Source: Bugula neritina
Taxonomy: Eukaryota; Animalia; Bryozoa
Assembly (NCBI GenBank): GCA_964035545.1
Contig: OZ037765.1
Coordinates: forward strand, 14,270,698 to 14,334,697
Direction of reading: 5' to 3'
Length of the DNA stretch: 64,000 bases
Shown here: one piece after another, positions 1-51,880 of the stretch
Numbering within the stretch: the stretch's first letter is position 1
Layout of the letters: every line of letters begins with the position of its first letter
Made by a program: the position numbers and the translations under genes
Notes under the pieces: generated by a model
The model's input: only the letters and a program-made list of their open reading frames with translations
Databases searched by the model: none
Told to the model about the DNA's origin: nothing

Positions 1-3000
1 GAGGGTGTTTGTATTCCACGAAGTACTCTATATCAGCATTATATAGAGTTCTGTGAAAGTCATGAGCTAAACCCTGTAAATGCTGCCAGCTTTGGAAAGG
101 CAAGTTAGCAAAGTTATTAATATTCTATTATATACTTAAATTATTTTAATTTTTTTATTTTTAAAGCATCTTTCTAAAAACTTGCCATTGCAACTTCGAA
201 ATTTATACCTTCTACTTTTTTATTTCACCAGCATTAATATTGCTGGCTTACTACAATATATTTGTATCAACTAATCTTCTAGTGCTTGTAATTAAATATA
301 TGGCTACAGAACACTCTAACTACTGACATATGATCTTTTAGATTATTAGGCAGCAGTTTCCACAGATTACTACAAGAAGACTGGGCACCCGAGGTCAGTC
401 CAAGTACCATTACTACGGTATTGGTGTGAAAGAGCAATCACAATACTATGATCTGGTGTACTCTAAGGCTGGTTTGCAATGGTAATATATATAACCTTAT
501 TTAGCGATTCTTGCAGTCTTTTCTATCTTCCATCCACTACATATGCACATTCGCTTATAGAACTATATACTGTAGGTTTTTTCAGCAAATAGATACAACT
601 CTATGCATGGCAATATATATACTTAAAAGTGGCATCCATAGTAATAGGTAATTTGCAATTTGCATATATTTTATAAACAAAATGTGTGAACTTATTTTGA
701 AGCAGTGATAATGCAAATAGATAGGTGAGAGTACAAGTAGATACATGTATATTAACATAAAGTGGTTTCTAGTATAGAATAAAATATCACGTTGATTTTA
801 CAATCCTGTTCAATGTTTTGCTACAAAGACTATCTCATAGTTCATGTCATGGCAGTCACAGTAACCTGTGAATTCTAATCAGGAAACTGAGCAAAGTTTA
901 TTGCTGATCAAATTTCAACCTCTGGCTCTGGAGACTGAAATTGTCAAAATTGCTGGTCCTGAAAATCAAAGTCGCATGTTTGAACTACATAAATGACACT
1001 TATTAGCAATTGATTATGTGTATGAGTATAACAGAATACAAACTTGACTATGAATGCAGTTGTACTATCTACCTGTTATGTTCACATTAATCTGCTTTAC
1101 ATTCTTAATCTGATAGAGCTTATTGTTCATATTCTCTAGTTCAAATGCTACTAAAAAGGAAACACCAAAGCAGACACCAGTGCAGGCATATTCTCCTAGA
1201 AGTAAGATGGGTACATTATTACCAGACTTCCCAAACATTGATGAGCTGAAACTTCCAAAGGAAATAGAATCTGATAAGGTTGCATGTCATATTCTTATCT
1301 ATTGTTTTTGTTCACACGAATAATCCCATGTGCTCTAGTAGTACGAGTATAAAAAACTCATAGCCACAATTCATGTGAGAACTTTGGTGATGAGAAGTTT
1401 TACCAAAGTTATATGTTTTGTGCCAAGCCATGCTGGTAATATGGTTTCAGTGGTTATGCTATATGGCTCAGGAACAATAGTTGTGACCGAATGATGTCTA
1501 TAGTCCTGCTGACTCAACATGTATGAGTCACGTTTGACAGCTTCTCTAACTGAGGAAATATTGCAGTTCTTTTTTTGGCAGCAACAGTGCATAACCCGTG
1601 TGTTATATTGTTCCATCTTATTGTACACTTTATACCTTTTAGTCAAAAATAGTTCACTTACTCTATAACCCAATCATTTTTTTCTATTATTCATAAAACT
1701 ATTTTATATTTACAACATCTGTAAGTCTAGAGTAATATTGGCATATTTATCACTCATGGTGTGATAACAAAGCCTAAAGCTCACTCAAGCATGGTCAGAC
1801 TTAAAAATGTTTAACAAGTTTCTAACTATTAGAGGTTATAGCTTTTATTAAATCTATAGTTTACAATATTCTTATCAAGCAGGCTATTTATAGCTTCCTG
1901 TTTTTGCATTCTATGCGAATATTCATCTGAGCTAGCTGGTAACAGTTATACTTGATCTGCGTTTCTTAGCCTGTGAGTTGACATAATTGATTGTGGAAAC
2001 TTGAGGCTTGCTAGTAACTCAGGCTATTTTATTAACTAGGTTTGTTAGTGTTGACAAACCTGTTGACTCATCATTTAAATTCAGAGGTTTCTCTTCAATT
2101 ACAATTTTATAAAAACAAAATGGAAGACGTTTCATAACTTCTATATTTACTATGTTTCAGAGCAATTTCTTCATCATCCCATAATTATTCATCGTATAAC
2201 ATAAGTCTTTACTTTGGCCATTTTCGTCTTGCATGTAGTTAATAATTATGCATATTCTTACTCAGTGAGTTATGAGCACTTGTCATTAACAAGAAAATTT
2301 ACTTTTTCACTTTTGCACTTTGCATTACAATAGAATATATCATAAGGGACTTGCATACTATCAAATCTGTGTTTGCAAGGTGCGTCATAAATAATTTACA
2401 ATAACCTACCGTAAAGTGTTTCACTGGCATTCAGTTTTCTGGTTTAATTTCTAATCTATATGGTGTGGTCATCCTTAATAGGTTTTTTCTTCTATATCAT
2501 TATTATTATTATTAATCTCGTTGAGGCTGTAGTTATGTTGATGATGAAACTTCATATTGTAGCTTCTAACCTTTGTCATGATGTACAGAACACATTGTCA
2601 AAGGATACTAGATACAGTAATAAGAGCCAATTTTGATGAGGTAAATACTAACTAGTATATAGAGTCTTAGCCTATACCTGATAATGCAGGCAAGCTTTGT
2701 TTTCATACACGTTTTTTTTAACAAATTATGATGCAAGGCTGTTTTGCACTTGCTGTGTTATAACAACATGCTTATTCAGCTACGTAACAGTAATATTTTA
2801 GTGTTGCTTACCGTATATGTGTTCCATGGCTCTCGGCAATCTCTGCTTGCGTTGTTTGGTAATACAAAAACATGTTATGTTTGCTGCAGGTACAGAATTT
2901 TCTACTTCATTTCTGGCAAGGTATGCCAAGTCACATGACAGCTATACTTGGTGCTAGTCAGATAGTTGGTATGGTGGCGGTGTGTGACACTATATTATAC

Positions 3001-9959: not shown

Positions 9960-12900
9960 TTAAGTCGGTTGTTTTGCCCTAATCTCATCATCCTGCTCTT
10001 TCAATTTCTCCCAGTGATCTCTAGCATTTCTCAACGGTATCACCATGACATCATGCAATTGAGGGAAAAGCTGTAATATTATAAGTAAAAAGTTATACAC
10101 AAACATGAGTAACTTGAAAGTTGTCCATTCTTTTTTCATGTAAGCACGAAAAGACAACTTTTACGGTATATGCCAAGTTCATGCATGACTCTAAAAGTTA
10201 GAAATATGTACCAAACACAATTTTTAAAAACCAAATTGCAAAACCTTAAAGCTTAATTATGTATGCAAGCAATTTTACATAAATGCATATAATTATTTGT
10301 ATTTAATGATTTATTTTTAAAATTTTCATCATGATTTATAAGCATTAAGCCACAGCTCCCATATAATCAAAATACTTTCATAAGTCTATACACAAAGCCA
10401 ATGTAGGGTGTATTACATTCTAGGATATGATGTGCTAAGGAATAGGTAGTAGATATCATTGAACTAGTTCTCACCAGAGCTACTTGTTCGAACATGGGTA
10501 GCAGCACGAACTTGATGAAACCAATCTGCGCGGTAGGTTTAGTCACTTTATCTCTGTCCATAAATGCAGCAACAGGTAAACCTTCCTCTTTCTCTTTATC
10601 TGACTGCAACATACACAGTAGAGTTTTATATCAGATATTGCATAACCTATCATCAATTAGTGCATTATTAAGCCTATAAATTTAAGACACCTAAAATATT
10701 GGACAAATGTAAAATATCTGAACATATAATACAGCAGCTGCAAATAAAACTTTATTCAAGAGGCAGTTAGTAAAGCAATCAATTAGCTTTGTAAAATCTC
10801 TCTAAGTGTTACACAGTTGAGAATTAAAACGATAATTTTGAAATTAATTAACAACAAAGTCATGTTACTTTGTGTTGTAAAAGTCATAAAAACAATGCAG
10901 GACTATTTAGTAAGAGCGAGCCCATACATAGATGACTAAAAAATGCATACACTGAATCAAAATATGTAATCATAACTGAATTTTTAATTTACTAAATATC
11001 TCAAAAATTATATTGAATAGTCTCAAGCTTTTCTTTCTATAAGACATTAAATTTTAGTTTAACATAACTATTTGCTATAAACCTTATGTTGTATGAAGGA
11101 TAATATAATTTTGGACTCACTATCTATCATTTCTATACATGCTATTTTTCTGGTCTACTCTAAAGATATATAAATTGTGATGTTATTACAGTCCAGTAGT
11201 TACTATAGAGAAATACTACTACTAGCACCAGCATAGTAACAGCACCTTTACAGTAATTATATTATCAACTCAACATCCCAGAAGCCTTTGTCACCAATAG
11301 CCAACACTCATACATATTAGCCATTCTTGTTTCCTCACATGTACCAGTAGATTCTATAAAACCTGTAAATGTGAACTTCAGTCAGGAGCAAAAACTTCTA
11401 TAGAGTTGCTTACAATCCCAATGAGTAACTCACTTGGTTGAAATATTCTTCAAGGAGACAGTCTAGCCATGGTTCGCTTATCTCCATCGGCCGCACCTCG
11501 TTTGATATGTCACAGCATTTAATCAAAACCATCTTAAGCTGCAACACACTAATAACATTAAAAATATTTCAAGTATTAAAAAGTTTTAAAATGTCACAAA
11601 AGACACGGATTGTGACTAACTGCTACAGCTGTAGGGGCAAATCGTATAGTAATCGAGTGTGTAGTAATGCAGTGTGTAGTAATATAGTGTGTAGTAATAC
11701 AATGTACAGTAATACAGTGTACAGTAATATAGTGTATAGTAATATAGCATATAGTAATATAATGCATAGTAATACAGTGTACAGTAATACAGTGTACATG
11801 CAGTAATATAGTGTATAGTAATATAGTGTATAGTAATATAGTGTATAGTAATATAGTGCATAGTAATATAGCGTATAGTAACATAGTGTATAGTAATACA
11901 GTGTACAGTAATACAGTGTACAGTAATATAGCGTATAGTAATACAGTGTAGAGTAATATAGTGTATAGTAATATAGTGTATAGTAATACAGTGTATAGTA
12001 ATATAGCGTATAGTAATATAGTGTATAGTAACTTAACCTGTAAATATCAGAGTAGTATGTTAATATAATTAAATTGTACACTTGAATTTTATGAAAAGAA
12101 ACAAAACAGGTAAATTTAATAGCAGACTACAATATTAACTCATAAGTTTCACTATAAAATTATCATAGAAAGTATCACAGTCAGAACTGCTAGATAGAAT
12201 ATTACAGTAAGATACTGACCACAACCATTACAATAAGATGCACTACGATTCAAGAATCATAACTACGGTAGCTATAACCTTAAATATAACTGAAGGCTTA
12301 GACCTAAAGTCAACCAATTTCTGTTGTCAGATACTAGGTGAAATTCGTTTGCAGCTAAAATAAACACTTTAGAGCTGCAGCATGACCAAAATGAATGTAA
12401 ATGAAACAACATAATTAAAGTTTTAAAAGGCGAATCATAACTAAATATTACCGCCATTAAGTCATCATCATTGCAGAAATTGAAATTTTCTCGTTTTCCT
12501 TTAAAAATGTCCATGATTTCAGAATGCCGTGCCATATCAGTTGCTAGTATCAAAGTTATAATTCCCTGTTGGTCAACAACAAAAAGTAAAATAATAAGTC
12601 ACACAGAGAAAACCATTAAGAAGTGTTCAGTATTCTGCATAATAGCTCTTGTTCCAACACTTGTTTCTTTTGTTAACTAGTGTGATGAAGATTCAAAGTT
12701 GAATAATACTGAACACTTCTTTTTGGTGTTTGGGGTACTGACAACTAGCAGATCCTACCGAGATTAAATGCTCTTCATTAGACAGTTTAAAGCCATTGTT
12801 TTTACAATTAGCTTTGAAAACCTCCAAGATTTCTCCATGCCTTGCCATATCAGTAGCTAATATCAGAGATGTCATGCCCTGTTTAGCATAGAAAGTGTTA

Positions 12901-15900
12901 AGAAAGATTATACTATATTATATTATATTATATTATTGTAATATAATATATTATAGTATACTATTGATCTTTTCTAAGTTTTTTTTATACCTGATGCTCA
13001 AAAAAATTTACTGTTTGCTATAAGTTAAAAACAGTGATGCAAAGAGTTCTTGCATTTGATAAACCCATGGCCTGAAATAACATAACTATTACATAAAAAG
13101 CCTTCCTGAAAGTTCATTTTTTGTAGACATGATTCATATTTATGAGCACCACATGTAGTTAGCAATAGAGATTTATAAAAACTCTTCCTGCAGCAAGAAG
13201 TTGGTTCATTTCTTTTTATAATAGTCAAGTTCCCATTCAAAGTGGCAATTATAATGCTTAAAAAACCCTCAAGTAGCTACTATGAGATAAGTAACGACTA
13301 GATATATTCAGTTCTTACAGCCTCATTGTCATTCTCTCACCCTGAAATGCTTGACGGCCATGTATATGCAAAGTAGTTACAAGTAAATGTGTAATAGATT
13401 AAGTATGAAGAGCTCTTACCATTCGGATTCGCTTGAATGTTTCCTGGTCACAGTTGGCAAAGATGTTAGTCTCTGGGTTGCTTAGTATTTGGAAAGCTAC
13501 GGCACAGTGGTGATTCTCCAGAGGAGAGATATCATTGTATCTAATCGCCAGCTCTGTTTTGGCATTAATCTGGTATCTAAAGAATACATACAATAGTGTA
13601 TAACTAGCTACAGGCTTATTTTTTTAAAACAAATTTTTCTATAACATAAATAGCGAATCTTTGACATTTTTTACAAATATTTTGTATTACTAGCTTGCAT
13701 ATCTTCCAATGATAAACATGCATTTCAAGGACATAAATAAACTTTCGTCAGTATCATTTCTGAGAGTAAGCAAATGTGATTCAGAGCACAGCCCTTCTTG
13801 TTAATTTATATAACACATTTTGATTTTTTAATTGTAATAGATAAATAAATTTGCCTCTTAAAATTTTTTTTAAAACAAGCTGAACAAATTTTGATATTTT
13901 ACAAATAGTTTGTGAGAAAAACTGTCTGACCAAAATTTATAAAAAACTTTATTACAATATATCATTATTGTACAATGCAATTTTTATTGCATCATGTGCT
14001 ATTTTATGGCGCTGTGTGGCATTATAAACAGTAAGGCTCTCAGTTGATCTACAATTTCGGTACCGTACTAAATTTAAGCTACATTATTGAAAATAGCAAA
14101 TTCTGATTGGTTAGAAAAGCTTTTAAACTAAAATATAGACATGTGGCTTAAACTTAAGTTGTTCTTTATAGAACCAACAAATAATTAGTAAATGAATTAT
14201 TGATTGAAGTTGAAATTGACAGTCGTATGAGCTCAAACCTGCGTGAGCCCACGCACACACACCACTAACTGATACTCCCTTGTTAAATAGTTGTTGGCTG
14301 CACTTTGATTTTTATAGTCCAGAAATATGCAAACCTTGAAACATATTCATACAAACTGCATATAGTAAACCCTATACCATATGCTTTAGTAGGTCAACAA
14401 GCATGTGTATATGTAAATACAAGATTTTTATTTCTCACGTGTTGTTATATCCAGGGTGATCAAGATCATGGCAGATACAAGCAGTAATCAGTATGCCGAT
14501 ATCCTCTTTAGCAATGTGCTCATGGAGCTTGCAGAGGTGGATCATACCATACATCATTTGGGTGACACAGAAGCAGTGTCGAAAATTGTGAAATGGGTTG
14601 TTTCTGTAGTTCTCCTGAATGCACAGCTAAAGTATACAGAAAGACAAGGTGAGCCCTCTCAGCACAAATTTCTATAATAATCAATTTTATTTGAAGTCAT
14701 AAAGCTTAAAAAGAAATTTTTAAATTCAAAATTAGCTTCTTAAAGAACAATACAGTTAACATATAGTGCACATAGAAAACAATTTAGAGTTATTGTTATT
14801 GTTTTTGTTGTTCTTGTGAGTTTGACATTCTTCAACAATATTTTTTATCCAAGTGTAGGTACACAAAATTCAAAATTTACAAACTTTGCGCAGTAAAAAA
14901 CCAGGCACATTACCATTACAGCAAATTCAACTCAACAACTTATTTATAACCATTGACTAATATTTTTTATATGCTATGTGTATTTTAGACTACATTTTGA
15001 CTCGATCTGTATGTGTTTCACCCACCAGCCATTTCTTCAGCGTGACGCCATTAATATTAAACTCTTTAACCAGACCCAGCTCATGGTACATGTGCTCCAG
15101 TAGGCTCAGCATCTACATACAGTAACACAAACTTACACTTTATGGAAGCTGCAACACCCATGTGTGGCTCAACACATGTACTTTATAATTAGAAAGGAGT
15201 TGTAAGTTTCAATTCAATAGGATAACTTTGCAGGATGATTAGGCAACGGGTTGACAATTTCCAAATAATTAAAACTTAAAATAATGAAAAAATATGTTAG
15301 CAGAATTTACCTCATTGGGTTCCCAGTGCCATATGTCAAATGTTGGCTGTTTGAGGTACTCAATGGTTTCCTTTGAGAGTGTGTACTAAAATGGATATAG
15401 ATTATGCAACATTTTAGCACAACAGAAATATTAAACCTTTTAAATTTGTAATGTGGCAAGAAACTCAACTATGCCAAATAATGTTCTTTCTCTGAGCAGA
15501 TCTTCAGTGACCGCATTGACTGGGCATGGTGGGGAGTACAAGCCAAAAATCCAACTGAGCAGCTAACAGAATACAAATACACAGGAGTTATGACCCCAAA
15601 ATTTTGAGTTGAAAAGGTGGGAGTTGTATTCTCTATATATGTATGCAACAGGGCTATCTAGTAAAAAGACGAAAGAATTGCCTGCTATGTTATGCAGCAT
15701 TGAAATAGTGTTATTTTTATCTTAAAATTATTATAAACAGCATTATAATGAAATGTGTGTGACACGCAACGGAGAGTAATCACAGAATAATATGTAAAAT
15801 ATTGGCCACTACACACTATTAATCTAAAAAGTGAAACTGAGTCTAAGTAGTATTGACCCAAATATATAAAAGTCCCAACACCAATCAATTTAGTAGAATC

Positions 15901-18900
15901 ATTGTCATAGCAATAAATACATTTAAATAATCAAGGTTTTTTAATTTTGCTTGATTTCCCATGTTTTTCCAAATTATTTAGCTACTTTTGATTGCGGACC
16001 ATCATGGTTTTTTCGTAATGGTCCACAATCAAAATTAGCTAAATAATTAGAAAAAACATGGGAAATCGAGTAAAATTAAAAAAACCCTGATTATTTAAGT
16101 GTATTTATTGATATGTTTTTAGTTTTGGGCAAAAACTCGTATTAATCAACAGCTAAATTGTGAAAAATAGCTAAAAACTGGAGATTTCCAGTGTGTACTA
16201 AATTAAGTAAAATGACCCATATATGTATATATATGACTAGCTTGAACGTGAAATTTTCGTCTGAAACAAGAATTGGTTCAACTGTCAGATAACTTGCTAT
16301 AACTTTAGGCCAACTTTGCAGTACTGTTATGCTATATAGTGCTATGGTATATAATTATGTAATATAAAACATAAAATTAAAATAATTATACATACTAAGA
16401 ATAACCATCAAGATGCATTACTTTACTTTAAGATGATGCTATACTCCAATTATCATCAGCAACACTGGAAAATGAAGCAAGAGGAGCCTCCCTTGGTAAA
16501 TAGGGAACCCTGGTCACTTTTACCCACCATGAATGTTTTATATAAACTTTATCATATTGGTATATATAATACTTGTAATGCTAGCTACTGTTATTGAAAT
16601 AGCATATACGACAATTATAATGCCTATAATTATTGTGAATTACGGCATATGTTATGCAGCTTACAACAATTTCTCTTTTTATTCAAGTGTTGTATCTTAT
16701 AATCATGCATTATTGCGTTTGTCGGTTGTTATTATAACATGTTTATTCAAGAGATTGAAATTCTTGCCATATACAATCTCATTTCACATATATACATATT
16801 CAAAGTTTTATCAGTCTAAATATTTACAGATAAAGTTATTTACTCAGCTGTCAATATACTTGCCAACATTTGAGGATAAACTTATAGCATTACTCAATGC
16901 ACTAAAATATCAATTGACTCTTGTTCAATAAAAAGTAGAATAATTTTCTGAAATAGGTATATATCTCATATTTACCCCTGTTATATAGTATATATCTCAT
17001 ATTTACCCCTGTTATATAGTATACATCTCATATTTACCTTTGATATAGTATATTTGCAAAACTTATTCCTCCGGAATCTTGCAACAGCTAACATTATTGT
17101 TACGATTTTATGGTAAAACCATAAACCTTTTATTAGCATGTTATAATAAACTCATGCAAGTTTATAGTCACCATCCCAGTGAGAATCCCTGATGGAAAGG
17201 GTTTTTTTGAAGCAGGTTAAGGACTTACTCGTATGAGGCACAGGAGCAATAATGACTGAACGCTCTTCCTAACATCACCAATGGCTTTACTGGGGATCAA
17301 ACCCATGACTCCGGGTTTACTAAGCCAATGCTTTAACCTTTAGACCATGCTGCTCCCTTTTTACTAGCATGTTATGCTGCATTATAATTTCTGAACTTTT
17401 TTCATTAGAAAAAACAACTTCTACTGAAGTCAAAATTAACAAAAAGGTGGAAAATATTACAAAATTACATTTTGTACTTATTTTTAAAAACTAACAAAAT
17501 TTAAACGTGTAAAAACTAAAAATCCATACAGTGTTCATCTATCATTTCAGTTTTAGTATTTGTGCTTTACAGTAAAACATTATTTAATGCAAAGACTACT
17601 TTAATGAAAATGGTCAAATTTAGCTTTGCCTTTTCTATGCATGTTCCATCCTAAAAAGCATGACCTAGGCCAACTGCGCAACAGTGAAGAGTTTGTTGCG
17701 ATTCATATTGAGATACTATATATATAATAGACAATTGTTCAGGTGTAGTAGACCCCCCTAGACACCATTAGATTTTGTGTACAATGTAGTGAGTGCTTAA
17801 GGTGTATACAACATTATGTGTGCTAGTGACCACACATATAGCAAAAAAATCTCATTTTTATGTGGTCTATTTTAGACAGTTCTAGACTTTAATTCACTTT
17901 CTATATAAACATCAAATAATGAACTTTGAAATTCTAAACTGCACATGATTCAACTGTAGAATATAATCTATACATGTTGGCTCAACATATGAATGTCAGG
18001 TAATTGGAAACCAAACATAATAGTTCAATAGTTTAAACTTTCAAGCCAGTTCGGTCATTAAATTGTGTGTTGCATCAGCTATGATTAGCATACAACGAAA
18101 GTAAGCAATAATTACTATTATTTTTACAATACCACAAACTCCAGAGCCGATCAAAAATTCTTTGAGCACACAACACTCCAAAAGTCTGTAGATGATATAT
18201 ATTAATATTTAATACAGCCCAAACGAGGCTTTTTCAGGGATTCTTTAACTTGACTGTAAACACAGACTTCTGTTGGATTTAAACAGCATTTTAGCATGTA
18301 GTCAACAATTGCTCAACACTTCAGACAGTGGGGACAGTGCTTGTGTGGGCATCAGCTAGTATCATCTCTATCATGCAGCTATACCTATTGTAAATATTGC
18401 TGCATGGGTACATACTATTGCATCTTATTAATTTATGGATTACCTTAGTATAGTGCGGGAGTACAGCGTGTCTTCGGTAGCTACTCTGAATCTCTGGTAT
18501 CATGGCGTGCTCTCCACTAACAAATAAATAAACAATTCTAGTCTCCATATAACAAATACATTTATATTTTATAAAAGTTGCTATGCATTAGTGGCACATA
18601 TCTTCATCCAATCAAACACTGCCAAAGTTTCAATAAATAAAAGAGTGTTTATAAAAGCTTATCAGTTTAAACAAAATTACTGGGTTACAAATGTTGTTTG
18701 ATAAAACACATTTTAAATTTTAAAAAAAGGAACTTTTCCTGAATTCAAATATTTATCTATTGACTCCACAACAGTGAAAGCATTACTAACTGATAAATAA
18801 TGGTTTGACACAAACAGCCCATTCTGTCTCAGGAATGTAACTTGCATTACTTCTACACAAAGTTACAGTAGGATAATTATTCTTGCAAAGACTGCAACCC

Positions 18901-21900
18901 AGCATACGACTTGCAAAAAATCAATAAGTATGAGTTATCAATAAGAAACCTGGAGCCTTCGTCACTCTTTCATAAGACAATGTAGTAGATGAATTTAATT
19001 TGTTTGAGGTTTGAAAATTTGAATTCATTGAAAAGCTGGTGTTTGTTGCTATCTAAGATATGTAGGACATTACAGCTACAGACTATACAAGTTTAGTACT
19101 TATGAAGTATTTGTAACTACAGTGTAAAGAAAAAAGGTTAATGCACCTCAGCATACTGTGGTATATAAACTTTTTCTGAGCTTCATAGATTTGACTTCTT
19201 ATCCCATCTATACTTTTCTTGCATTTTTCTATTTCTACAGACTTTAGTCCCTCTTCTACAAAGTATAAGAAATGAAAAGTATATGTTATATCTATGGTAA
19301 CAAAATAGCTCAGTGACTGACACAACACTATTGTAATTATAGTAGACACATGGTTACATAATAAGCTGATATACGTGATATACAACTATCTTGATGCTAA
19401 ACTGATAATACAATCTTTATCATACAGAAGTACTTGAAGTATATTTCTAGTGGGGTTAATAGACTTCAACCACTCCACTGTATACTAAAATATCTAATAG
19501 CTGCTGCTACTAATATCGTATACAACCAGTCATTATACCTTTGTAAGCATCATAAACCTAGAATACTTTGATTAAAGCTAAGTTAGAAGCAGTAGCAGTA
19601 GTGAAACAAAGTTCAAGAAGCCATTTTTAATATCCTAGTAACTAGGGTATAATGGAGTGTAAGAATCTTAAAACTAAAAACCTCTGACCTAAGAAACAAA
19701 GAATACAATCTAATATATTACAGAAAAAAGCATAAAATCTAGTAGCACATGAGAGAAAAGATTGTATTGCAATATATTGTACTGCACTAGTCTACAGTAG
19801 TTAGTATTACTGGCTGTATAAAATGTAACATACTCTCCATTCTCTTCTCTAAAACTGTGATTCGCTCAATAAGTGTCGGTACAGTTGCTGCAGACGAATG
19901 ACTACAATAAGCATCAGAAACATGTTTATAACCCAGCAACATTTTCTAGGAATAAAATATGATATTTTGTAACTCGAGGGCATAACGCTAAAATTAGTTT
20001 TTACATGTATATATGAATTAGAGAAAAAAAAAACACATTTAAATGTTATATATCTACACATGCTACAAAAGATGCAGCCTTCAGTAATTATTGAGACTAT
20101 AGCAATGTTTAATAAAGTTTTGGAATAAAGTAAATTGAAAAATGCTGATGCTGTGGCCCCCAACTCAAACTGAAGTTCACAATGTGGCCCTCACCACCGG
20201 AATATTTCTTTTCAGTAGCCCTCGGTCTGAAAAGGCTGGACACCATTGTTCTAGACATAAGATTCATTGTTTATCAGTTTGTTATTTTATAATGAGAATA
20301 CATATGGACACCCCACTCAGTTTCATCACAGAATCTTTTAGATACTTTAAAAATTGAACTGGATAGTATTTTACAAGCCTACCTTCCGCCAGCAATAGTT
20401 GTTTCGTAGTGTTAGCTACTGCTTATGGAAGTTACTATAATTGCCTAATTGCAATGAACCAATCTACGTAGTTATTAGCTACAATTAATTATGTTTAAAA
20501 GTTCACTTTCTCTCTCAATATACAACATAAAGTATTAAGCAGTCTACTCAGGGGTGCCTGTTTCACTGAGCACATCAACATACAGTCTCTAGCCTGGTAT
20601 AGCTGCGTATATACTAACAACTATATAGTTTACACTTAGCAAAATAGCAGCAATCTTTACTAAAGTGTGAAAGATAAATGTCTATCTGAACAAATCAATA
20701 ACATCAAAGAAACAAACCACCAGATTAGAAAAAAAAGAAATAATGCTGTTAGCACCATAATATTTCTACTGTGGGTTTATTGAAAATTTGCAAGCAAATT
20801 GAAAATGCAGGGCAAACAATTTTAAATAGTCGGAAATTCGACGCAATTGAAATTAGGTATAAATCACTAAATGATAAATTAACAACATACCACAGTCAAC
20901 ATTTACATGCTGATTGCTTATATTCTATAGAAATACTGGTAGTAGTCCATTATTGCTGACTAGATTGATATATACTATTTTAGAATGTCATTAAAAATAT
21001 CACATGTCAATGTTCTAAGGAGCTCACAAATTGCTGCAAATTAAACCAATAATTGCCACTTACAAGATCTTTTAAGTAGTTAGTTTAGGAAGAGCTATAT
21101 TTATAGAAACCTTACCCAGCGGGTTTACATTCTATGGTAACTTAACACACTATTATAACAGAAATAATATTAGTAAAAAATATTTTTAAAAAAAAATATA
21201 TATATTTATTTATATGAAATTTTCTTACTGCCAAACAATGAAATTATTGCGTTATATACATATAACATATAACAACGGATAAGCAAGTTAAATCTTACTA
21301 CAAACAAAAAACCTTTATCCAGATCTTGTTAAACTTAACTCTTTACTTTTGGCAGGAGACTATTTATTATAATGTATTTGTTAGAAGGCTGCAGTAACTT
21401 GCAGCAGCCAGGTATAGTTAAGATATGGTCAGAGTGCTAGTGTTGAAGCTCTCAATAGGATCTTAACTAGCCTTATGGCGTTATAATTAATTTAATGGCA
21501 CATTAGATTAGGAGATACTGTTGCAGTTGGTACTGTAGAGGTTCAAACAATGCAGCAGACAGACAGCTTTCAAGTTATCAAGCCGTTGATCTGGAAAAGG
21601 GGTAAATTTCTAACAATTTTCATGCTTCCGTGCTTGAAGTAGTAAACAAAATTCATTAAAGGAATCCTAAAGCAATTTAAGAAAGGCGGATAAAAATATT
21701 GTAGATCTTTAGATTTGCCATTGCCGTTATATGCATACATATTAATGCTGCCTCAATCTATGCTACCAACTATTTGACAGCGCCCACTTACCTAACCAAC
21801 TGAGAAGAAAGCTGATCAACGTTATGCACAGTAGCCAAACCTGACAACAACTCTAAAAAACATTGCAACACAATTAGTTATTTAGACCCCAAAATTGGCT

Positions 21901-24900
21901 GGGAATAATTGGCCTGAAGACAGCTGTCTCGCCTTAACCCATAAAATTTAATGATCAAATGAGTTAAAAACCAGTAGAATACATATGATGCTTCTGCTTA
22001 TGAATGCATGTTAATAGATAGTTGTACAGTCCAACAGCTCTAGCTTCTACCTACCATACACTATAAAGCTTATGCTAAGCGGTAATGCAATTAGATTTCT
22101 ACTCATTATATCTTCCACTGCTTCAAGAAGATTTAAAAATTCTATATAAAATAATCTAGCAAAACTCTGTAAATAAAACTGTAAAATGTAGACTTAATTT
22201 GAAAATAAAGACTAGGTTTAATAAATAATTCATTCTAAACACTGGAATTAAATTGCTGATCTTAATAATTAATAAACTTAGTGTTGGGTATGTATGGGTG
22301 TATATACCATAAAACCTGCATCTGCCTGAGGCAGCTTAACACAGTCACAATACGGCTTACAGATTTTACAGCCTACAATGAGCTTGTTTTTCTACTTCAC
22401 ACCTATCAAGTTCACAAAATCAGTAAAACTTTTCTTATAAATAATGTAACAGCAAAAATGTAGTAGATAAAGACTAGAGAACATAATAAACAGAGAAAAT
22501 AAACATCAAACCTGTTAACTGAAGTGTAGTTAAAGAAGTAGCAGTAGCTGGCTTGATCTCCACAATGTAAGGGTTACTATATGAGTAAAAGATACGCATG
22601 GTGCTTATATATGGTTACAATGTAAAATAGGTCAAGATATGATCAAAGTTAAACTTTTGAAAATATGTGAAAATTATAGGGTAGGTTTATTAGTGTTCAC
22701 GCAAGCTTCAAAAATAACCAAAGGGTAATCATTCTTAAGTAGGCCAACAGGTGCTTTGTGTAAAGCTGAATTGTCAACTAACCAAAAACAACTTGGTAAC
22801 GGTTTATCACTACTTGTTGACAATATGTTTCCCCGTGAAATGATGTTACAGAAATGCCTGTAACATACCTACTAGGCATATCTACAAGGACATATACACA
22901 TATATCTAACGCTTCATGTTTCAATTCATAACACATGCATATGAAGATTCTATATTGTCCATAACATCTTTTTATAATTTACTGCTAAACAGTTTAAATA
23001 AAATGGGAATTTAGTTATTTTTGCTTCAGTTATTTGTAAGTATTATTTCCACAAACTTTATAAATAAGTTGAAACACTAACTATTTTATTATAATTGATC
23101 AATAACTGTTTATAAGTTTGCTGCATCAATAACAAGAACCATTATAATATTTCTCTAAATCTATGAATCATGCTGTAAAACTATTGGCTATAATTATGCT
23201 GCTGTGTAATAAAAATATTATAAAGTAACAGTCGTTGTTAACCTTACAGAAATAATTAACATTGGCAAAAAGAGCATAGCCTACCATTGTGCACAAACCA
23301 TTGCCACTTGAGAAGAAACGTTCATCTGTTCAAGTAGTTTTAACCATACAACATTGAGATTGGTATTACCTTACTGGAGCGAGTTTCACAATGGAGTCAT
23401 TAATAGCTGAATTGACTAACAGTTGCTTTTCACAGCATTTATTTAAAGCAAAATTCTATTTTGAGATATTAATATTGAGCTAAATTAGTGTTCAGTTGAC
23501 CAGCTTTAAAGTATAAAATAAGCAGACACTATATATAACTCATTTTAATGGGGCCTGCATAATTAATACTATCTTTCTGCAGTAACATTGCAATACTTTG
23601 AATAACAAACCTTTCAGTATTTTGTGGAATTGTGGGAGATACAGTCACATAAGCTCCATCCGAGTTTCTTAAAGTAATTTCACAAAGTCTGAAAAAAATA
23701 TGGTGAGGTATGACTTATAGCTAGTTATGTTGTAGTGATGACCATTTCCTCAAATTACCAGGGAGAGTTTTACTTATAATAATATAGTAATAGGCTGCAG
23801 AAAATATTTGTAAAGACACCATAATATGAAATTGTAATATGAATACTGTATATAACTGTATTAAAAGTCAACAACAAATAAAAAACTCCTTTATTTATAT
23901 TTGAGAGAAATTTTATATACCAATAATAGACTTCCCTTTTTAGTAATTCTGGCATAAGATTTACATGTACATCAATCAAATACGAGTATTATACAGGAAT
24001 TTGTAGATGTGATGCATAAACATATCATATCATAGGAAATATGCAGTATATTGCTTATCACTAAAACTCAACTAGGTCTCCCATGAGAATAAAATATGTA
24101 ATTATTTTACATAAAACAGTACATTTACAATATATCCGTGTATGTTATTTCAATATTGGTGAAGTGGTTAATACAATACACAGAAACACACTAAAACTTG
24201 TTTGCTAGAGCATGAGGAGATGAAGAGGATATTACAAGTATAAATTATATCCCCCTTGAGAGAGGGAATGTGGCATAAATGGCTCACATGCATGCATATA
24301 TTATATAAGTTATTATATTGTAGCTGATGTAATTTCTTACAAGCAAAATGATAATGCATGTGGGAAATAACCTACTTGTTGACCTTAGCTGCCTGGCAAA
24401 TCAGCTCCTGTATGTCTCTAGTGCTGGAATGTAAGCTGAAGACAATCTAAAATCATAAGTCATATCAATTGATGGGGTATGCACCAAGTAGTAGTGTTAC
24501 TGCGATAATATAATCACTATATTATACATTCCTATATAATACGTTACTACATTAAACATTGCTGTATTTTTAAAGCTATATTATACTTTACTATAATATT
24601 GTTGATGGTGCTATATGCTGAAAACTACTTCTAGTTTTATGACAAATTGTGCATTTCCATTGTTTCAAATTATTCAATGGATTTTTCATTGATGTTTCGG
24701 AACAGTTGCAGCAAATGAAACCACAACCACAAATTTAATGCAAATCACAACCACAAATTTATCCATATGAGCATCTATATGGATCCACTCAAAGCAATGG
24801 AAACACAATGGATATTGAAGCATGTAAAAATAACAGATTGCAACACTACTAAAACGCTTTAATATTATTTAAACTGTATTATGCCAATGTGAAGAAAATG

Positions 24901-25099
24901 CTAACTATACCTGCCGTCAAGTCTAGTTCAATTGTCATATATTTACAATGAAAATCATATTGTGAATAAGAATGTATCTTGGCTATTAGTCTATAAAGCA
25001 TAAGTGAATAGAATACAGTTGATTTATCACCTTTTCAACAGAATCCTCAATTTCTAAGAACACCGACTTTGAAGCGTCAAAGCTAGATCCGTTTCCCAT
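9960..25099 (-). CDS. PDE9A: High-affinity cGMP-specific phosphodiesterase 9 (about 507/509 aa; 16 exons per isoform, exon 13 duplicated)
   Basis: Exons (minus): 25099-25031, 24446-24376, 23688-23611, 22576-22512, 21840-21792, 19901-19834, 19255-19171 (donor ambiguous, 19147 also in phase), 18516-18444, 15385-15311, 15112-15026, 14626-14439, 13576-13420, [12878-12759 or 12565-12452], 11538-11434, 10603-10475, 10070-9960. N-terminus MGNGSS (myristoylation-type). PDE9-type motifs: [87 protein letters not shown]. Confidence 0.95.
11645..12031. repeat. 15-bp minisatellite (TAGTAATAYAGTGTA), about 25 copies, in a PDE9 intron
   Basis: Directly visible tandem array. It generates the spurious YYYTL/LLYTI ORFs in the ORF track. 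Confidence 0.95.
12452..12565 (-). CDS. PDE9A: PDE9 alternative exon 13b ([38 protein letters not shown])
   Basis: 114 nt, phase 0-0, ccaacag acceptor, GCG|gtaata donor; intact [10 protein letters not shown] motif. Confidence 0.88.
12618..12721 (-). promoter_or_regulatory. Intronic stem-loop (perfect 17-bp inverted repeat) between the duplicated PDE9 exons; candidate splicing-regulatory RNA structure
   Basis: aagaagtgttcagtatt (12618-12634) is the exact reverse complement of aatactgaacacttctt (12705-12721). The repeat is directly visible; its function is inferred. Confidence 0.7.
12759..12878 (-). CDS. PDE9A: PDE9 alternative exon 13a ([40 protein letters not shown])
   Basis: 120 nt, phase 0-0, ctaaacag acceptor, TCG|gtagga donor; paralogous to exon 13b. 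Confidence 0.88.
15906..16115. mobile_element. Palindromic fold-back/MITE-like element (arms about 100 bp, short loop) in a PDE9 intron
   Basis: 15906-16006 is the near reverse complement (about 90% by eye) of 16014-16115, e.g. gatttcccatgtttt / aaaacatgggaaatc. Confidence 0.75.
16957..17050. repeat. 31-bp tandem repeat, about 3 copies
   Basis: gtatatatctcatatttacccctgttatata at 16957 and 16988, diverged copy at 17019. Confidence 0.85.
17145..17357 (-). mobile_element. tRNA-derived SINE with target-site duplication
   Basis: The minus strand reads GGGAGCAGCA-TGGTCTAAAGG (A box)...GGGTTTGATCCCC (decayed B box), then a non-tRNA body (GTTAGGAAGAGCGTTCAG, recalling Meta-type SINE cores) and a TTA-like tail. 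Flanking direct repeats: ttttattagcatgttat (17128-17144) and ttttactagcatgttat (17359-17375). Confidence 0.8.
20140..20256. mobile_element. Probable truncated hAT (Charlie-like) MITE end
   Basis: Two tgtggccc subterminal motifs and a terminus ggctggacaccattg followed by ttctagac (NTCTAGAN-type target). The other end was not found. Confidence 0.4.
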
Positions 25100-26583
25100 T
25101 GCTTGTGAGAATTTATAGTAAAGATAAAGTTTGCGTGTGGTATTCTCAGCCTCCTATTTTAGCCCAGCAAAGATGAGTGATAAAGACCTAAGCAAATTGT
25201 TTAAACAAACAAGAAAACTGTTCCAACAAATTGTGCCAATATCTAATAAAACAACTTGGTAAATTGTAGGCTTACAGAAATATATGCACCATACTTAAAG
25301 TTTATACTTACAGTCTAAAAGCATGTATACCGAATGAATTTACCAGCAATATACAAGCTTAGTTGAAGATAACAAATATGCAGTCCTACCTTTCACATAC
25401 TAATAGTCAGTCCAGGGAGAAGGAATTATTGATAAGCAGTGTATGATTTCTATTGGCTGAAGACTTCGAATTAATTATTAGAGAACATATATAGACTAAC
25501 ATTATAAATGAGATGGTTGAGACAGAAAGTATACACAGCTTTCCACTGAGGGCAGTTAGTTTTCATATCATGTGTACTTGAAATTACTTGTTCACGATTT
25601 TCAGAAGCATTGCACACTAGAACTAGAGTTAGCTAAATACAGTTATCGGTATAAAATAACTCAGTAGTGTGGAATAGCTCAATCTGTATAAAGTGAATTA
25701 GTAGTTGAACCCCACAATTACATTGAGTTCTCATTTGCAGCCATTTTGTACGTATATGAATGATCATTACAATCTCTGAGAAAAACAATTCAATTTCTCA
25801 TGAACATTAAACAAAACAATTGAAGAACTGCTGACACTATTCACTTTACAAAAATGAACTGGTAGCTATATAGCTAAAATTATGTTTAACATTTTTTTCA
25901 ACAGCTTCTATTTATAGAAAGTAATATATTCACAGCATGTTCCCAGAATTGTTAAAACATTGAATTTGAATTACGTCTAAAATCTAAATAAAGGTAAATG
26001 TTATCTTAAACTTTGCTAGTAACATATTAGGAATATGGCTGCTACAGTGTTATCTGCTATCATTTAATTAGGATTTGTGTATAAGATTTTCCCCAGCAGG
26101 AGGTCGCACCTGCTCTTGCTCACAGCCATACTGCTATTTTACTTTAGAAACTTTGTACAGTGAAGGCTAAAGCATGCTGGTTTTAAACTCTTTCAGCTTA
26201 CACACGTCAAAGGATTTAGTAAAATCCATAACTTTGAGTTAATTTCTGCCCAGCTAATATAAAGGAAATTATTTCAAAGAAAAGCTGTACAATTTATTTT
26301 TACAAAGAGGATAATTTCTAGTTACACAACAGCATGTAATAGATCCAACAAAATTGAAAATTAACATGAAAATATAGGTGCCCGCAGCAAGGTATAATTA
26401 AAACTCTGGTAAATATATTTGTTCATGCAAGCAAGTTAAAATATAAAGTATAAAATTTGTATAAATTGTACACATCTGATAAGCAGTTTCACTACCGTCA
26501 CCAACAACTACTATGTCCTTCTTCCATCACTGCTTTATTCGGCTGAGCTTTTATGAAACTCCAGGGCTTGCTTAGGTGCCCCA

Positions 26584-46677
<20,094 letters not shown>

Positions 46678-50829: not shown

Positions 50830-51880
50830 CACTGGTACTCGGCCTACATCCGATTAGGAGGGGATTCCCTGAACCGGTATAGCGGCTAAAATTTGAACGA
50901 AAATGCTCCATAGGCAGCTTCTAGTTGGGGGTGATTGAGTGAAGTAGTTTGGAACTCCGAGTTTGAAGGTGGGGGTTTCAACTCCAAATCGAGAACTCCG
51001 AACTACTGCACTCAATAATTCCCAATTTGGAGCTGCGTCTAACAATTTATTAAAAGCGTCGGAGCCATCGTTGTCTAAACTCCAAACCTCTAAACTCTTC
51101 TCGATATCCCAACCATTACACATAGTTACCACCAACTTTGTGCAGCGTCGAGCGATTTTATTAAAGCTATAGTAAGTAGAACAAGACTTGCTACATTTAT
51201 TTAGTTTTACCTTTGGCTTTACTTTGCCTTGCCATTTGGCATTTACTGATTTAGTTTTACTTTTACTTTTAGTTTTAGTTTTACAAGGCTGAGGCACCCT
51301 ATCCTATGGCCCTACCTACTTTGACTTTCACTTTGGCTTTAGCTTTTAAAATAATAAAGAACTAGTCGTAATGCTAATACTAATAGAGCTCCTTTACTCT
51401 TATTAGTATTTTATTTTTTACTAATAAAGTTAATCTCCAATTATCATTCTGTGTTGAAATAAAGCTAAAAGTAAAGACCAATGAAATTGAATGAATGAAT
51501 ATCATTATCGTTATGATTGTGATACTTAAAGTTAATCTTATATTAATACTTACGCCTACGCCCTACGGGCTATAGTTGATAGTTATACTTACGTTTACTG
51601 ACTTAGTGTTATAGTTATACTAAGCTGTTCAGTTGATTTTTACACAATGTGTATTAAAATTAATTCATTTTCAATTTTGCCAATGTGTGATTTTAGTTGA
51701 AACGCCTGTGTTAATGTTGAAGAACAGTTAAGGAGACTTACCAATATGGATGGTGCCGGAAACACGAGCCGGTCAGTAATATTCAGTTATCAGTTGCAGT
51801 TGGTGAGATGATGGTGATTATCATACACATTCTTACCTGCAGCAGTAAACCATGACCTGCTCATAATTAAGTGGTTTAAA
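50830..51880. promoter_or_regulatory. CpG-enriched candidate promoter / non-coding first-exon region between the divergent DOT1L and PTH2-type genes
   Basis: About 16 CpG in 50830-51170 against a sparse background. Minus-strand donors at about 51740 (G|gtaagt), 51837 (CAG|gtaaga) and 50847 (gtaggc), and a minus-strand acceptor at about 51167. A plus-strand gtaagt lies at 51171. The TSS cannot be determined. Confidence 0.45.

What the first reader, a model, noticed from the sequence alone, without database searches (positions are those of the whole stretch)
12452..12878. PDE9 has two intact tandem copies of a catalytic-domain exon: candidate mutually exclusive splicing
Seen: two paralogous phase 0-0 exons (120 and 114 nt), both with canonical splice sites. 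Their shared [10 protein letters not shown] core has 4 synonymous and 0 replacement differences in 10 codons, while the distal halves diverge ([22 protein letters not shown] vs [20 protein letters not shown]). Known: vertebrate PDE9A has this segment once, and its isoform diversity is mainly N-terminal; the TDM motif adjoins the metal site. Inference: both exons are under purifying selection and give two catalytic-domain variants. Including both would keep frame but duplicate core helices, so NMD cannot enforce exclusivity and another mechanism is needed.
Basis: partly seen in the sequence, partly recalled or inferred. Interest (0 to 1): 0.85.

Follow-up and report, generated by a model that had tools for sequence, protein, structure and literature searches.

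The report
Ancient swappable exon pair in PDE9
A cGMP-degrading enzyme gene (PDE9) of a bryozoan-like marine animal carries two versions of one catalytic-domain exon; relatives splice them one at a time, bryozoans, ribbon worms, bivalves and annelids all keep the pair, and a folded RNA stem between the two probably stops both being used together.

Summary
Confirmed and extended. The exons (12878-12759, 12565-12452; minus strand, phase 0, GT-AG) are real and occur once each in the genome. However, two transcript contigs of one related species are identical except here, one with exon A only, one with B only; Watersipora RefSeq isoforms show the same swap. The pair, A before B, is in bryozoan, nemertean, bivalve and annelid genes; hemichordate, anemone and limpet genes have one copy. 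Both exons are under purifying selection. The 193-nt intron between them holds a perfect 17-bp stem (already noted by another first-stage reader, s1-481195, on this same stretch). New here: Watersipora and the bivalve Tegillarca have unrelated stems in the same position, stronger than in any of 101 control introns, and Lineus folds the intron into tandem hairpins. All shrink the intron to 80-99 effective nt. Likely mechanism: structure-assisted steric hindrance; not docker/selector, NMD or U12. Caveats: branch points unmapped, thresholds post hoc, Pacific oyster RefSeq models include both exons. A known kind of splicing, a gene case not found in the papers searched.

The parts
12759..12878 (-). 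PDE9 alternative exon A (13a), 120 nt, 40 aa, phase 0-0
   Evidence: orthologue expressed alone in L001/P0151 and Watersipora X1
12452..12565 (-). PDE9 alternative exon B (13b), 114 nt, 38 aa, phase 0-0; same length as the single exon of vertebrates and anemone
   Evidence: orthologue expressed alone in L002/P0001 and Watersipora X2
12566..12758 (-). 193-nt GT-AG intron between A and B; 67-nt AG-free zone before the acceptor
   Evidence: fold z -2.8
12705..12721 (-). 5' arm of the perfect 17-bp stem (intron +38 to +54; extended arm 12700-12730)
12618..12634 (-). 3' arm of the perfect 17-bp stem (-69 to -53 from the exon B acceptor; extended arm 12609-12639)
12615..12619 (-). candidate branch point for exon B (YTRAY, A at 12616, -51), 2 nt beyond the stem; predicted only
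   Evidence: similar motif 4-5 nt beyond the stem in Watersipora (-65) and Lineus (-68)
12748..12758 (-). exon A donor plus 11-nt stretch, 9/11 identical in Watersipora; the only intron sequence visibly shared
13420..13576 (-). upstream constitutive exon 12 (SPLENHH)
11434..11538 (-). downstream constitutive exon 14 (CCDISNE, second-metal Asp)
9969..25099 (-). span of the PDE9 coding region (start codon to last matched codon), all catalytic motifs intact; two or three short N-terminal exons not placed exactly
   Evidence: tblastn of related proteins

Best explanation
An exon of PDE9 (human PDE9A2 355-392: end of one helix, TDM motif, next helix, loop, start of the following helix) was duplicated in tandem once in an early lophotrochozoan. 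The two copies are normally spliced one at a time, giving two enzymes with the same catalytic residues but a different helix and loop beyond the TDM motif (SHOWN for relatives; INFERRED for this species). Joining of A to B is suppressed because a stable stem loops out most of the intervening intron and holds exon A's donor within about 20-45 effective nt of exon B's branch region, under the roughly 50-nt limit for loading U1 and U2 on one intron. A's donor can then only go to exon 14 and B's acceptor can only take exon 12 (stem position SHOWN by prediction in 4 species; branch point, in-vivo folding and the steric effect INFERRED). Which exon is chosen is probably set by splicing factors, not by a competing pairing. 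Confidence: about 0.9 for a functional swapped pair, about 0.55 for the stem mechanism; the number given is for the whole.
For: L001 and L002 have the same junction flanks and a 3' UTR identical over 664 nt, one ATDM each, A versus B. Watersipora X1/X2 520/518 aa. Same pair and order in four fetched genes of four phyla, and in Owenia, Mytilus, Pecten, oyster proteins. pN 0.22-0.27 (A) and 0.12-0.19 (B) against pS 0.42-0.91. Helix joining +15..38 to -53..-75: -22.8, -34.7, -19.7 kcal/mol in window, Watersipora, Tegillarca; best of 101 control introns -17.4. Unconstrained tiles: 2/329 and 0/114 as good. Lineus intron z -4.1. Effective donor-to-acceptor distance 80, 86, 85, 99 nt for introns of 193, 187, 769, 489 nt; controls median 264, 4/61 at 100 or less; Capitella intron natively 109 nt. 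50-nt threshold: PMC5740500, PMC7969005.
Against: No reads from this species. Eleven Magallana gigas RefSeq models contain both exons and three oyster/scallop models contain neither, so exclusion is not absolute everywhere; the oyster intron could not be fetched. Branch points are only predicted; the windows of the helix test were chosen after seeing the stems; stems share no sequence, so no column-wise covariation test is possible; Lineus fails the single-helix test (9/101). Stems that loop out an intron often help its splicing (PMC12519161). Animals with small introns may tolerate shorter donor-branch distances (own knowledge). Single origin has only 65/60 support.
Confidence: 0.55

Rival explanations
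1. The pair is a true swapped pair, but the stem acts by hiding signals: it masks B's branch point or upstream tract (or A's donor region) and must be opened for B to be used, so it is an on/off switch for B and not a steric clamp.
For: The stem ends within 2-5 nt of the best branch-point motif in three species; predicted helix extensions cover the motif in Watersipora and flank it in the window. OGDH distant branch points lie in hairpins whose pairing predicts use (PMC7969005).
Against: The motif lies just outside the core helix, and the effective intron length converges on 80-109 nt in five species, which masking alone does not need. An opened stem would allow A-B joining unless A is repressed separately.
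Confidence: 0.2
2. Exclusion is by tissue-specific splicing factors alone (PKM- or FGFR2-like); the stems are incidental, for example inverted-repeat remnants or general splicing aids.
For: Most human MXE clusters have no steric or frame explanation (PMC5740500); Rdl exon 3 is protein-controlled (PMC13762713); two other strong hairpins occur in the window.
Against: Same-position strong helices of unrelated sequence in three species, 0/101 controls; the arms do not recur elsewhere in the window.
Confidence: 0.13
3. The exons are two cassette exons with four regular products (A, B, both, neither); the both and neither forms are functional or regulated dead ends.
For: RefSeq models with both (M. 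gigas) and neither (Ostrea, C. angulata, Pecten).
Against: Every read-assembled (Logan, JGI) protein listed carries one copy (a biased sample). The segment is core fold; the both-exon model has pLDDT under 50 over much of the extra 39 residues (shallow alignment, weak), while A-only folds as PDE9. GenBank both-exon models look ab initio (inference).
Confidence: 0.08
4. In this species one copy is a silent remnant, or the repeat is an assembly artefact.
For: No reads of this species seen; limpet has lost B, so losses happen; A evolves faster than B.
Against: Both open, with canonical sites, each closest to its own orthologue in other bryozoans; same order in other phyla; copies only about half identical.
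Confidence: 0.04

Closest known systems
Tandem duplicated exon substitutions / homologous mutually exclusive exons (PMC9741552, PMC5740500; e.g. KHK, ACOX1, CAMK2D, cacophony)
   Same: Homologous neighbours of near-equal length and same phase, swapped singly, ancient, embedded in secondary structure, functional residues kept in both copies.
   Different: PDE is not mentioned in either human survey (0 hits); vertebrate PDE9 proteins have the segment once. This case is lophotrochozoan.
OGDH exons 4a/4b (PMC7969005) and alpha-tropomyosin 2/3 (own knowledge): steric exclusion by a distant branch point
   Same: Two homologous exons, short intervening intron, long AG-free zone, donor and branch point too close.
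   Different: There the closeness is linear (25-46 nt). Here the best branch motif is 143 nt from the donor and becomes close only when the stem forms; only Capitella (109 nt) could be the linear type.
Dscam exon 17.1/17.2: steric hindrance combined with RNA secondary structure (Yue et al. 2013, PMC3917985)
   Same: By its title, the same combination in a two-exon cluster.
   Different: The paper is not held, so details could not be compared. Here the stem is kept in position across phyla with no sequence conservation.
Docker/selector competing pairings (Dscam exon 6, 14-3-3zeta, Mhc, ATE1; PMC6071210)
   Same: Intronic RNA helices next to mutually exclusive exons.
   Different: Those pair a flanking intron with inner introns in competition. 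Here both arms lie in the one inner intron and neither has a second partner above shuffled controls.
Human PDE9A (cGMP-specific class I phosphodiesterase)
   Same: Orthologue: 70-72% identity, TM 0.86 for the A isoform of the relative; motifs intact.
   Different: Single 38-aa segment; B resembles it in length, A has 1-2 extra residues in the loop.

Membership tests
Homologous mutually exclusive exons (criteria of PMC5740500) | Neighbouring exons, similar length, same frame, similar sequence, no stop | tested here: met
Homologous mutually exclusive exons (criteria of PMC5740500) | Junctions that bridge each exon past the other | tested here: met
   in a related species (L001, L002) and Watersipora models; not in this species
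Homologous mutually exclusive exons (criteria of PMC5740500) | No reads joining the two exons | tested here: inconclusive
Homologous mutually exclusive exons (criteria of PMC5740500) | Both exons conserved and selected | tested here: met
Steric exclusion by distant branch point (OGDH type) | Linear donor-to-branch distance under 50 nt | tested here: not met
   YTRAY motifs at +86, +143, +186 only
Structure-assisted steric exclusion (Dscam exon 17 type) | Stable helix inside the intervening intron bringing donor and branch region under about 50 nt | tested here: met
   predicted 36 nt in the window, 22 in Watersipora, 34 in Lineus; 57 in Tegillarca if its branch point is at -43
Structure-assisted steric exclusion (Dscam exon 17 type) | Mapped branch point and compensatory-mutation rescue | not testable with these tools
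   needs lariat sequencing and minigenes
Docker/selector competing pairing | One element with two alternative partners in different introns | tested here: not met
   no second partner for either arm in three species, best shuffle fraction 0.05 among 24 tests; no shared intron blocks with Watersipora
NMD-enforced exclusion | Joint inclusion shifts the frame | tested here: not met
   120 and 114 nt
U2/U12 spliceosome incompatibility | A U12-type donor on one of the introns | tested here: not met
   donors gtaagagc, gtaggatc, gtaatatt; none has the ATCCT consensus (consensus from own knowledge)
PDE9 subfamily | Best sequence and fold match to PDE9; metal and substrate motifs present | tested here: met
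PDE9 subfamily | High-affinity cGMP hydrolysis by each isoform | not testable with these tools
   needs enzyme assay

The most novel reading that the evidence does not exclude
A single duplication more than 500 million years old gave lophotrochozoan PDE9 two catalytic-domain variants, and exclusion has been kept across phyla by an intron 'clamp' conserved only as geometry: unrelated stems (one helix, nested helices, tandem hairpins, or simply a short intron) that all set the effective intron length near 80-110 nt. That would be a structure-only constraint invisible to sequence-conservation screens and a rule that can be searched for in other exon pairs.
Probability: 0.4. Interest if true: 0.7.

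Novelty: new member of a known kind. Interest (0 to 1): 0.5.

Why it matters
PDE isoform diversity is mostly known outside the catalytic core; a swapped core helix kept in four phyla implies two enzymes with distinct roles in cGMP signalling of molluscs, annelids, nemerteans and bryozoans, and gives a natural test of what this helix and loop do in a drug-target family. For splicing, RNA structures at exclusive exons are said to be rarely conserved over long distances (PMC5740500); a stem kept in position without sequence would be a compact, testable case (one 190-nt intron, one helix). It also flags annotation errors: models that join both exons.

Tried and rejected
The reason was not stated as human-like, but after that call I sent no letters of that stretch to any search tool and worked with database proteins and local scripts; a genome-wide check of the stem arms as a repeat was therefore left out (window-only check). 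No human contig was fetched. Genes of Lingula and Hypsibius, and Watersipora X2, were not on record, so brachiopods and ecdysozoans are untested at gene level; no oyster gene was fetched. The Dscam exon 17 paper is not held. Paper searches found nothing on PDE9 exclusive exons. Rejected: docker/selector pairing, NMD, U12, linear steric hindrance, haplotype artefact. Independent duplications per phylum: rejected for bivalves (p-AU 0.02), not for bryozoans (0.18) or Lineus (0.22). The stem coordinates in my first notebook entry are off by 1-2 nt; those in this report are.

Full report
Observation. The ten core codons differ at four positions, all synonymous. Each matches human PDE9A from residue 355. 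The genome (216 Mb, 321 contigs) has only these two copies. The rest of the gene runs from 25099 to about 9970 with all catalytic motifs intact. The closest named relative of the nearest database protein is from Watersipora subatra (75% identity), so the window is most likely a cheilostome bryozoan (inference; species not identified).

Are both exons used? Relatives answer the question indirectly. P0151 and P0001 come from two JGI transcript contigs, L001 and L002. They have the same junction flanks and a 3' UTR identical over 664 nt; one carries only a 40-aa A-type exon and the other only a 38-aa B-type exon. Watersipora RefSeq X1 (520 aa) and X2 (518 aa) differ in the same way, and its gene holds both exons in the same order.

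How old is it? An exon profile finds both copies, A before B, between exons 12 and 14 in Watersipora, the nemertean Lineus, the bivalve Tegillarca and the annelid Capitella. A-only and B-only proteins exist for oysters, Pecten, Mizuhopecten, Mytilus, Lineus and Owenia. Genes of the hemichordate Saccoglossus, the anemone Actinia and the limpet Lottia have one copy; the limpet's is A-type. In a tree of the 39-column segment all A copies fall on one side of a branch and all B on the other, but support is only 65/60; 0 of 500 label shuffles do as well. Position 3 is Thr in 9 of 10 A copies and hydrophobic in 9 of 10 B copies and all 10 outgroups; A usually has 1-2 more loop residues. One duplication at or before the base of Lophotrochozoa, with later losses, is the simplest reading, not a proven one. 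Ecdysozoan genes were not tested.

Selection. Among three bryozoans, exon A has pN 0.22-0.27 and exon B 0.12-0.19, against pS 0.42-0.91; neighbouring exons have pN 0-0.07. Both are selected, both are freer than their neighbours, A the more so.

What is swapped in the protein. The exon covers PDE9A2 355-392. In the model of the relative's A isoform (pLDDT 85, pTM 0.86; TM 0.86 to human PDE9A) it spans the end of one helix, the TDM turn, a 17-residue helix, a 7-residue loop and the start of the next helix. Thr363 and Met365 border the metal and ligand site, while the metal ligands His256, His292, Asp293, Asp402 and the Gln453/Phe456 clamp lie in other exons (PMC10587872). TDM is the same in both copies. 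So catalysis is probably kept and the change falls on the helix and loop after it: kinetics, stability or partner binding (inference). A model of the oyster both-exon protein has pLDDT under 50 over much of the extra segment; the alignment is shallow there, so this is weak.

What stops A-B joining? Not NMD (both lengths are multiples of 3), not U12 donors, not a linearly close branch point (motifs at +86, +143, +186). The best inverted repeat in 2.3 kb lies inside the 193-nt intron: a perfect 17-bp stem, arms 12721-12705 and 12634-12618, ending 2 nt before a branch-point motif at 12616. Another first-stage note (s1-481195) saw this stem on the same stretch; I had found it before looking. The comparison is new. 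Watersipora's 187-nt intron has a 19-bp stem of unrelated sequence from +15 to -70, z -3.65. Tegillarca's 489-nt intron has a 16-bp stem from +25 to -75 with a second nested inside. Lineus's 769-nt intron folds into three tandem hairpins, z -4.1, the last ending at -72. In each of these four species the strongest helix of the whole exon 12-14 region (tied in Lineus) lies inside this intron. Helices linking the first 60 nt with -110..-40 score -22.8, -34.7 and -19.7 kcal/mol; none of 101 other PDE9 introns reaches that, and Lineus does not pass this test. Counting only pairs with probability over 0.9, donor and acceptor are 80, 86, 85 and 99 steps apart; controls have a median of 264 and 4 of 61 reach 100 or less; Capitella's intron is 109 nt as it stands. 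The donor then sits 22-36 steps from the best branch motif in three species, under the 50-nt steric limit used in PMC5740500 and PMC7969005. Neither arm has a competing partner, so this is not the docker/selector design of PMC6071210.

Limits. The test windows were set after the stems were seen, two of the species belong to one order, and branch points are predicted. Stems that loop out introns can also help splicing (PMC12519161). Eleven Magallana gigas RefSeq models join both exons and three bivalve models have neither; such models usually rest on some aligned reads (own knowledge), so exclusion is probably leaky in oyster. Joined GenBank models (Tegillarca, Mytilus, Capitella) look like prediction errors (inference).

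Comparison and verdict. This is a member of a known class, tandem duplicated exon substitutions, which are typically ancient and keep functional residues in both copies (PMC9741552). It works like OGDH 4a/4b steric exclusion but fails that family's linear-distance test; by title it is closest to Dscam exon 17, which I could not read. I found no paper on exclusive exons in PDE9 (the library is partial), although RefSeq already lists the isoforms. Real, ancient and functional: about 0.9. Stem-driven steric exclusion: about 0.55. Novelty: new member of a known kind. Interest 0.5; 0.7 if the geometry-only clamp holds across phyla.

Noticed in passing
window 11640-12030: Minisatellite of a 15-bp unit in the intron between exon B and exon 14; gives a spurious 152-aa ORF (11623-12081).
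   Followed up: no
window 12904-12965: AT-rich low-complexity hairpin (27-nt arms, 89%) starting 26 nt upstream of exon A's acceptor; probably microsatellite-derived.
   Followed up: partly
window about 15986-16034 and 50979-51035: Two other 19-bp hairpins stronger than the A-B stem, the first inside an upstream PDE9 intron.
   Followed up: no
G000:C247:10695-11434 (-): PDE-domain match with many stop codons and little sign of introns on a small contig: possibly a processed pseudogene or foreign DNA.
   Followed up: no
L007 (Lottia); P0193, P0216: The limpet gene keeps only the A-type exon, and Lottia has two PDE9 genes, both A-type; all gastropod, chiton and octopus proteins seen are A-type.
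   Followed up: partly
L006:12046-12382 (Capitella); P0212: The public gene model enters exon A at an inner acceptor and joins it to B; the full A exon is 38 aa and the most divergent copy seen.
   Followed up: partly
L004:25882-25901 and 26365-26384 (Lineus): A 15-bp helix pairs the A-B intron with coding sequence of exon B; no counterpart found in the other species.
   Followed up: partly
window 26584-37671 (-): Several long ORFs (up to 506 aa) upstream of PDE9; another note (s1-481413) calls them a giant DOT1L. Not checked.
   Followed up: no
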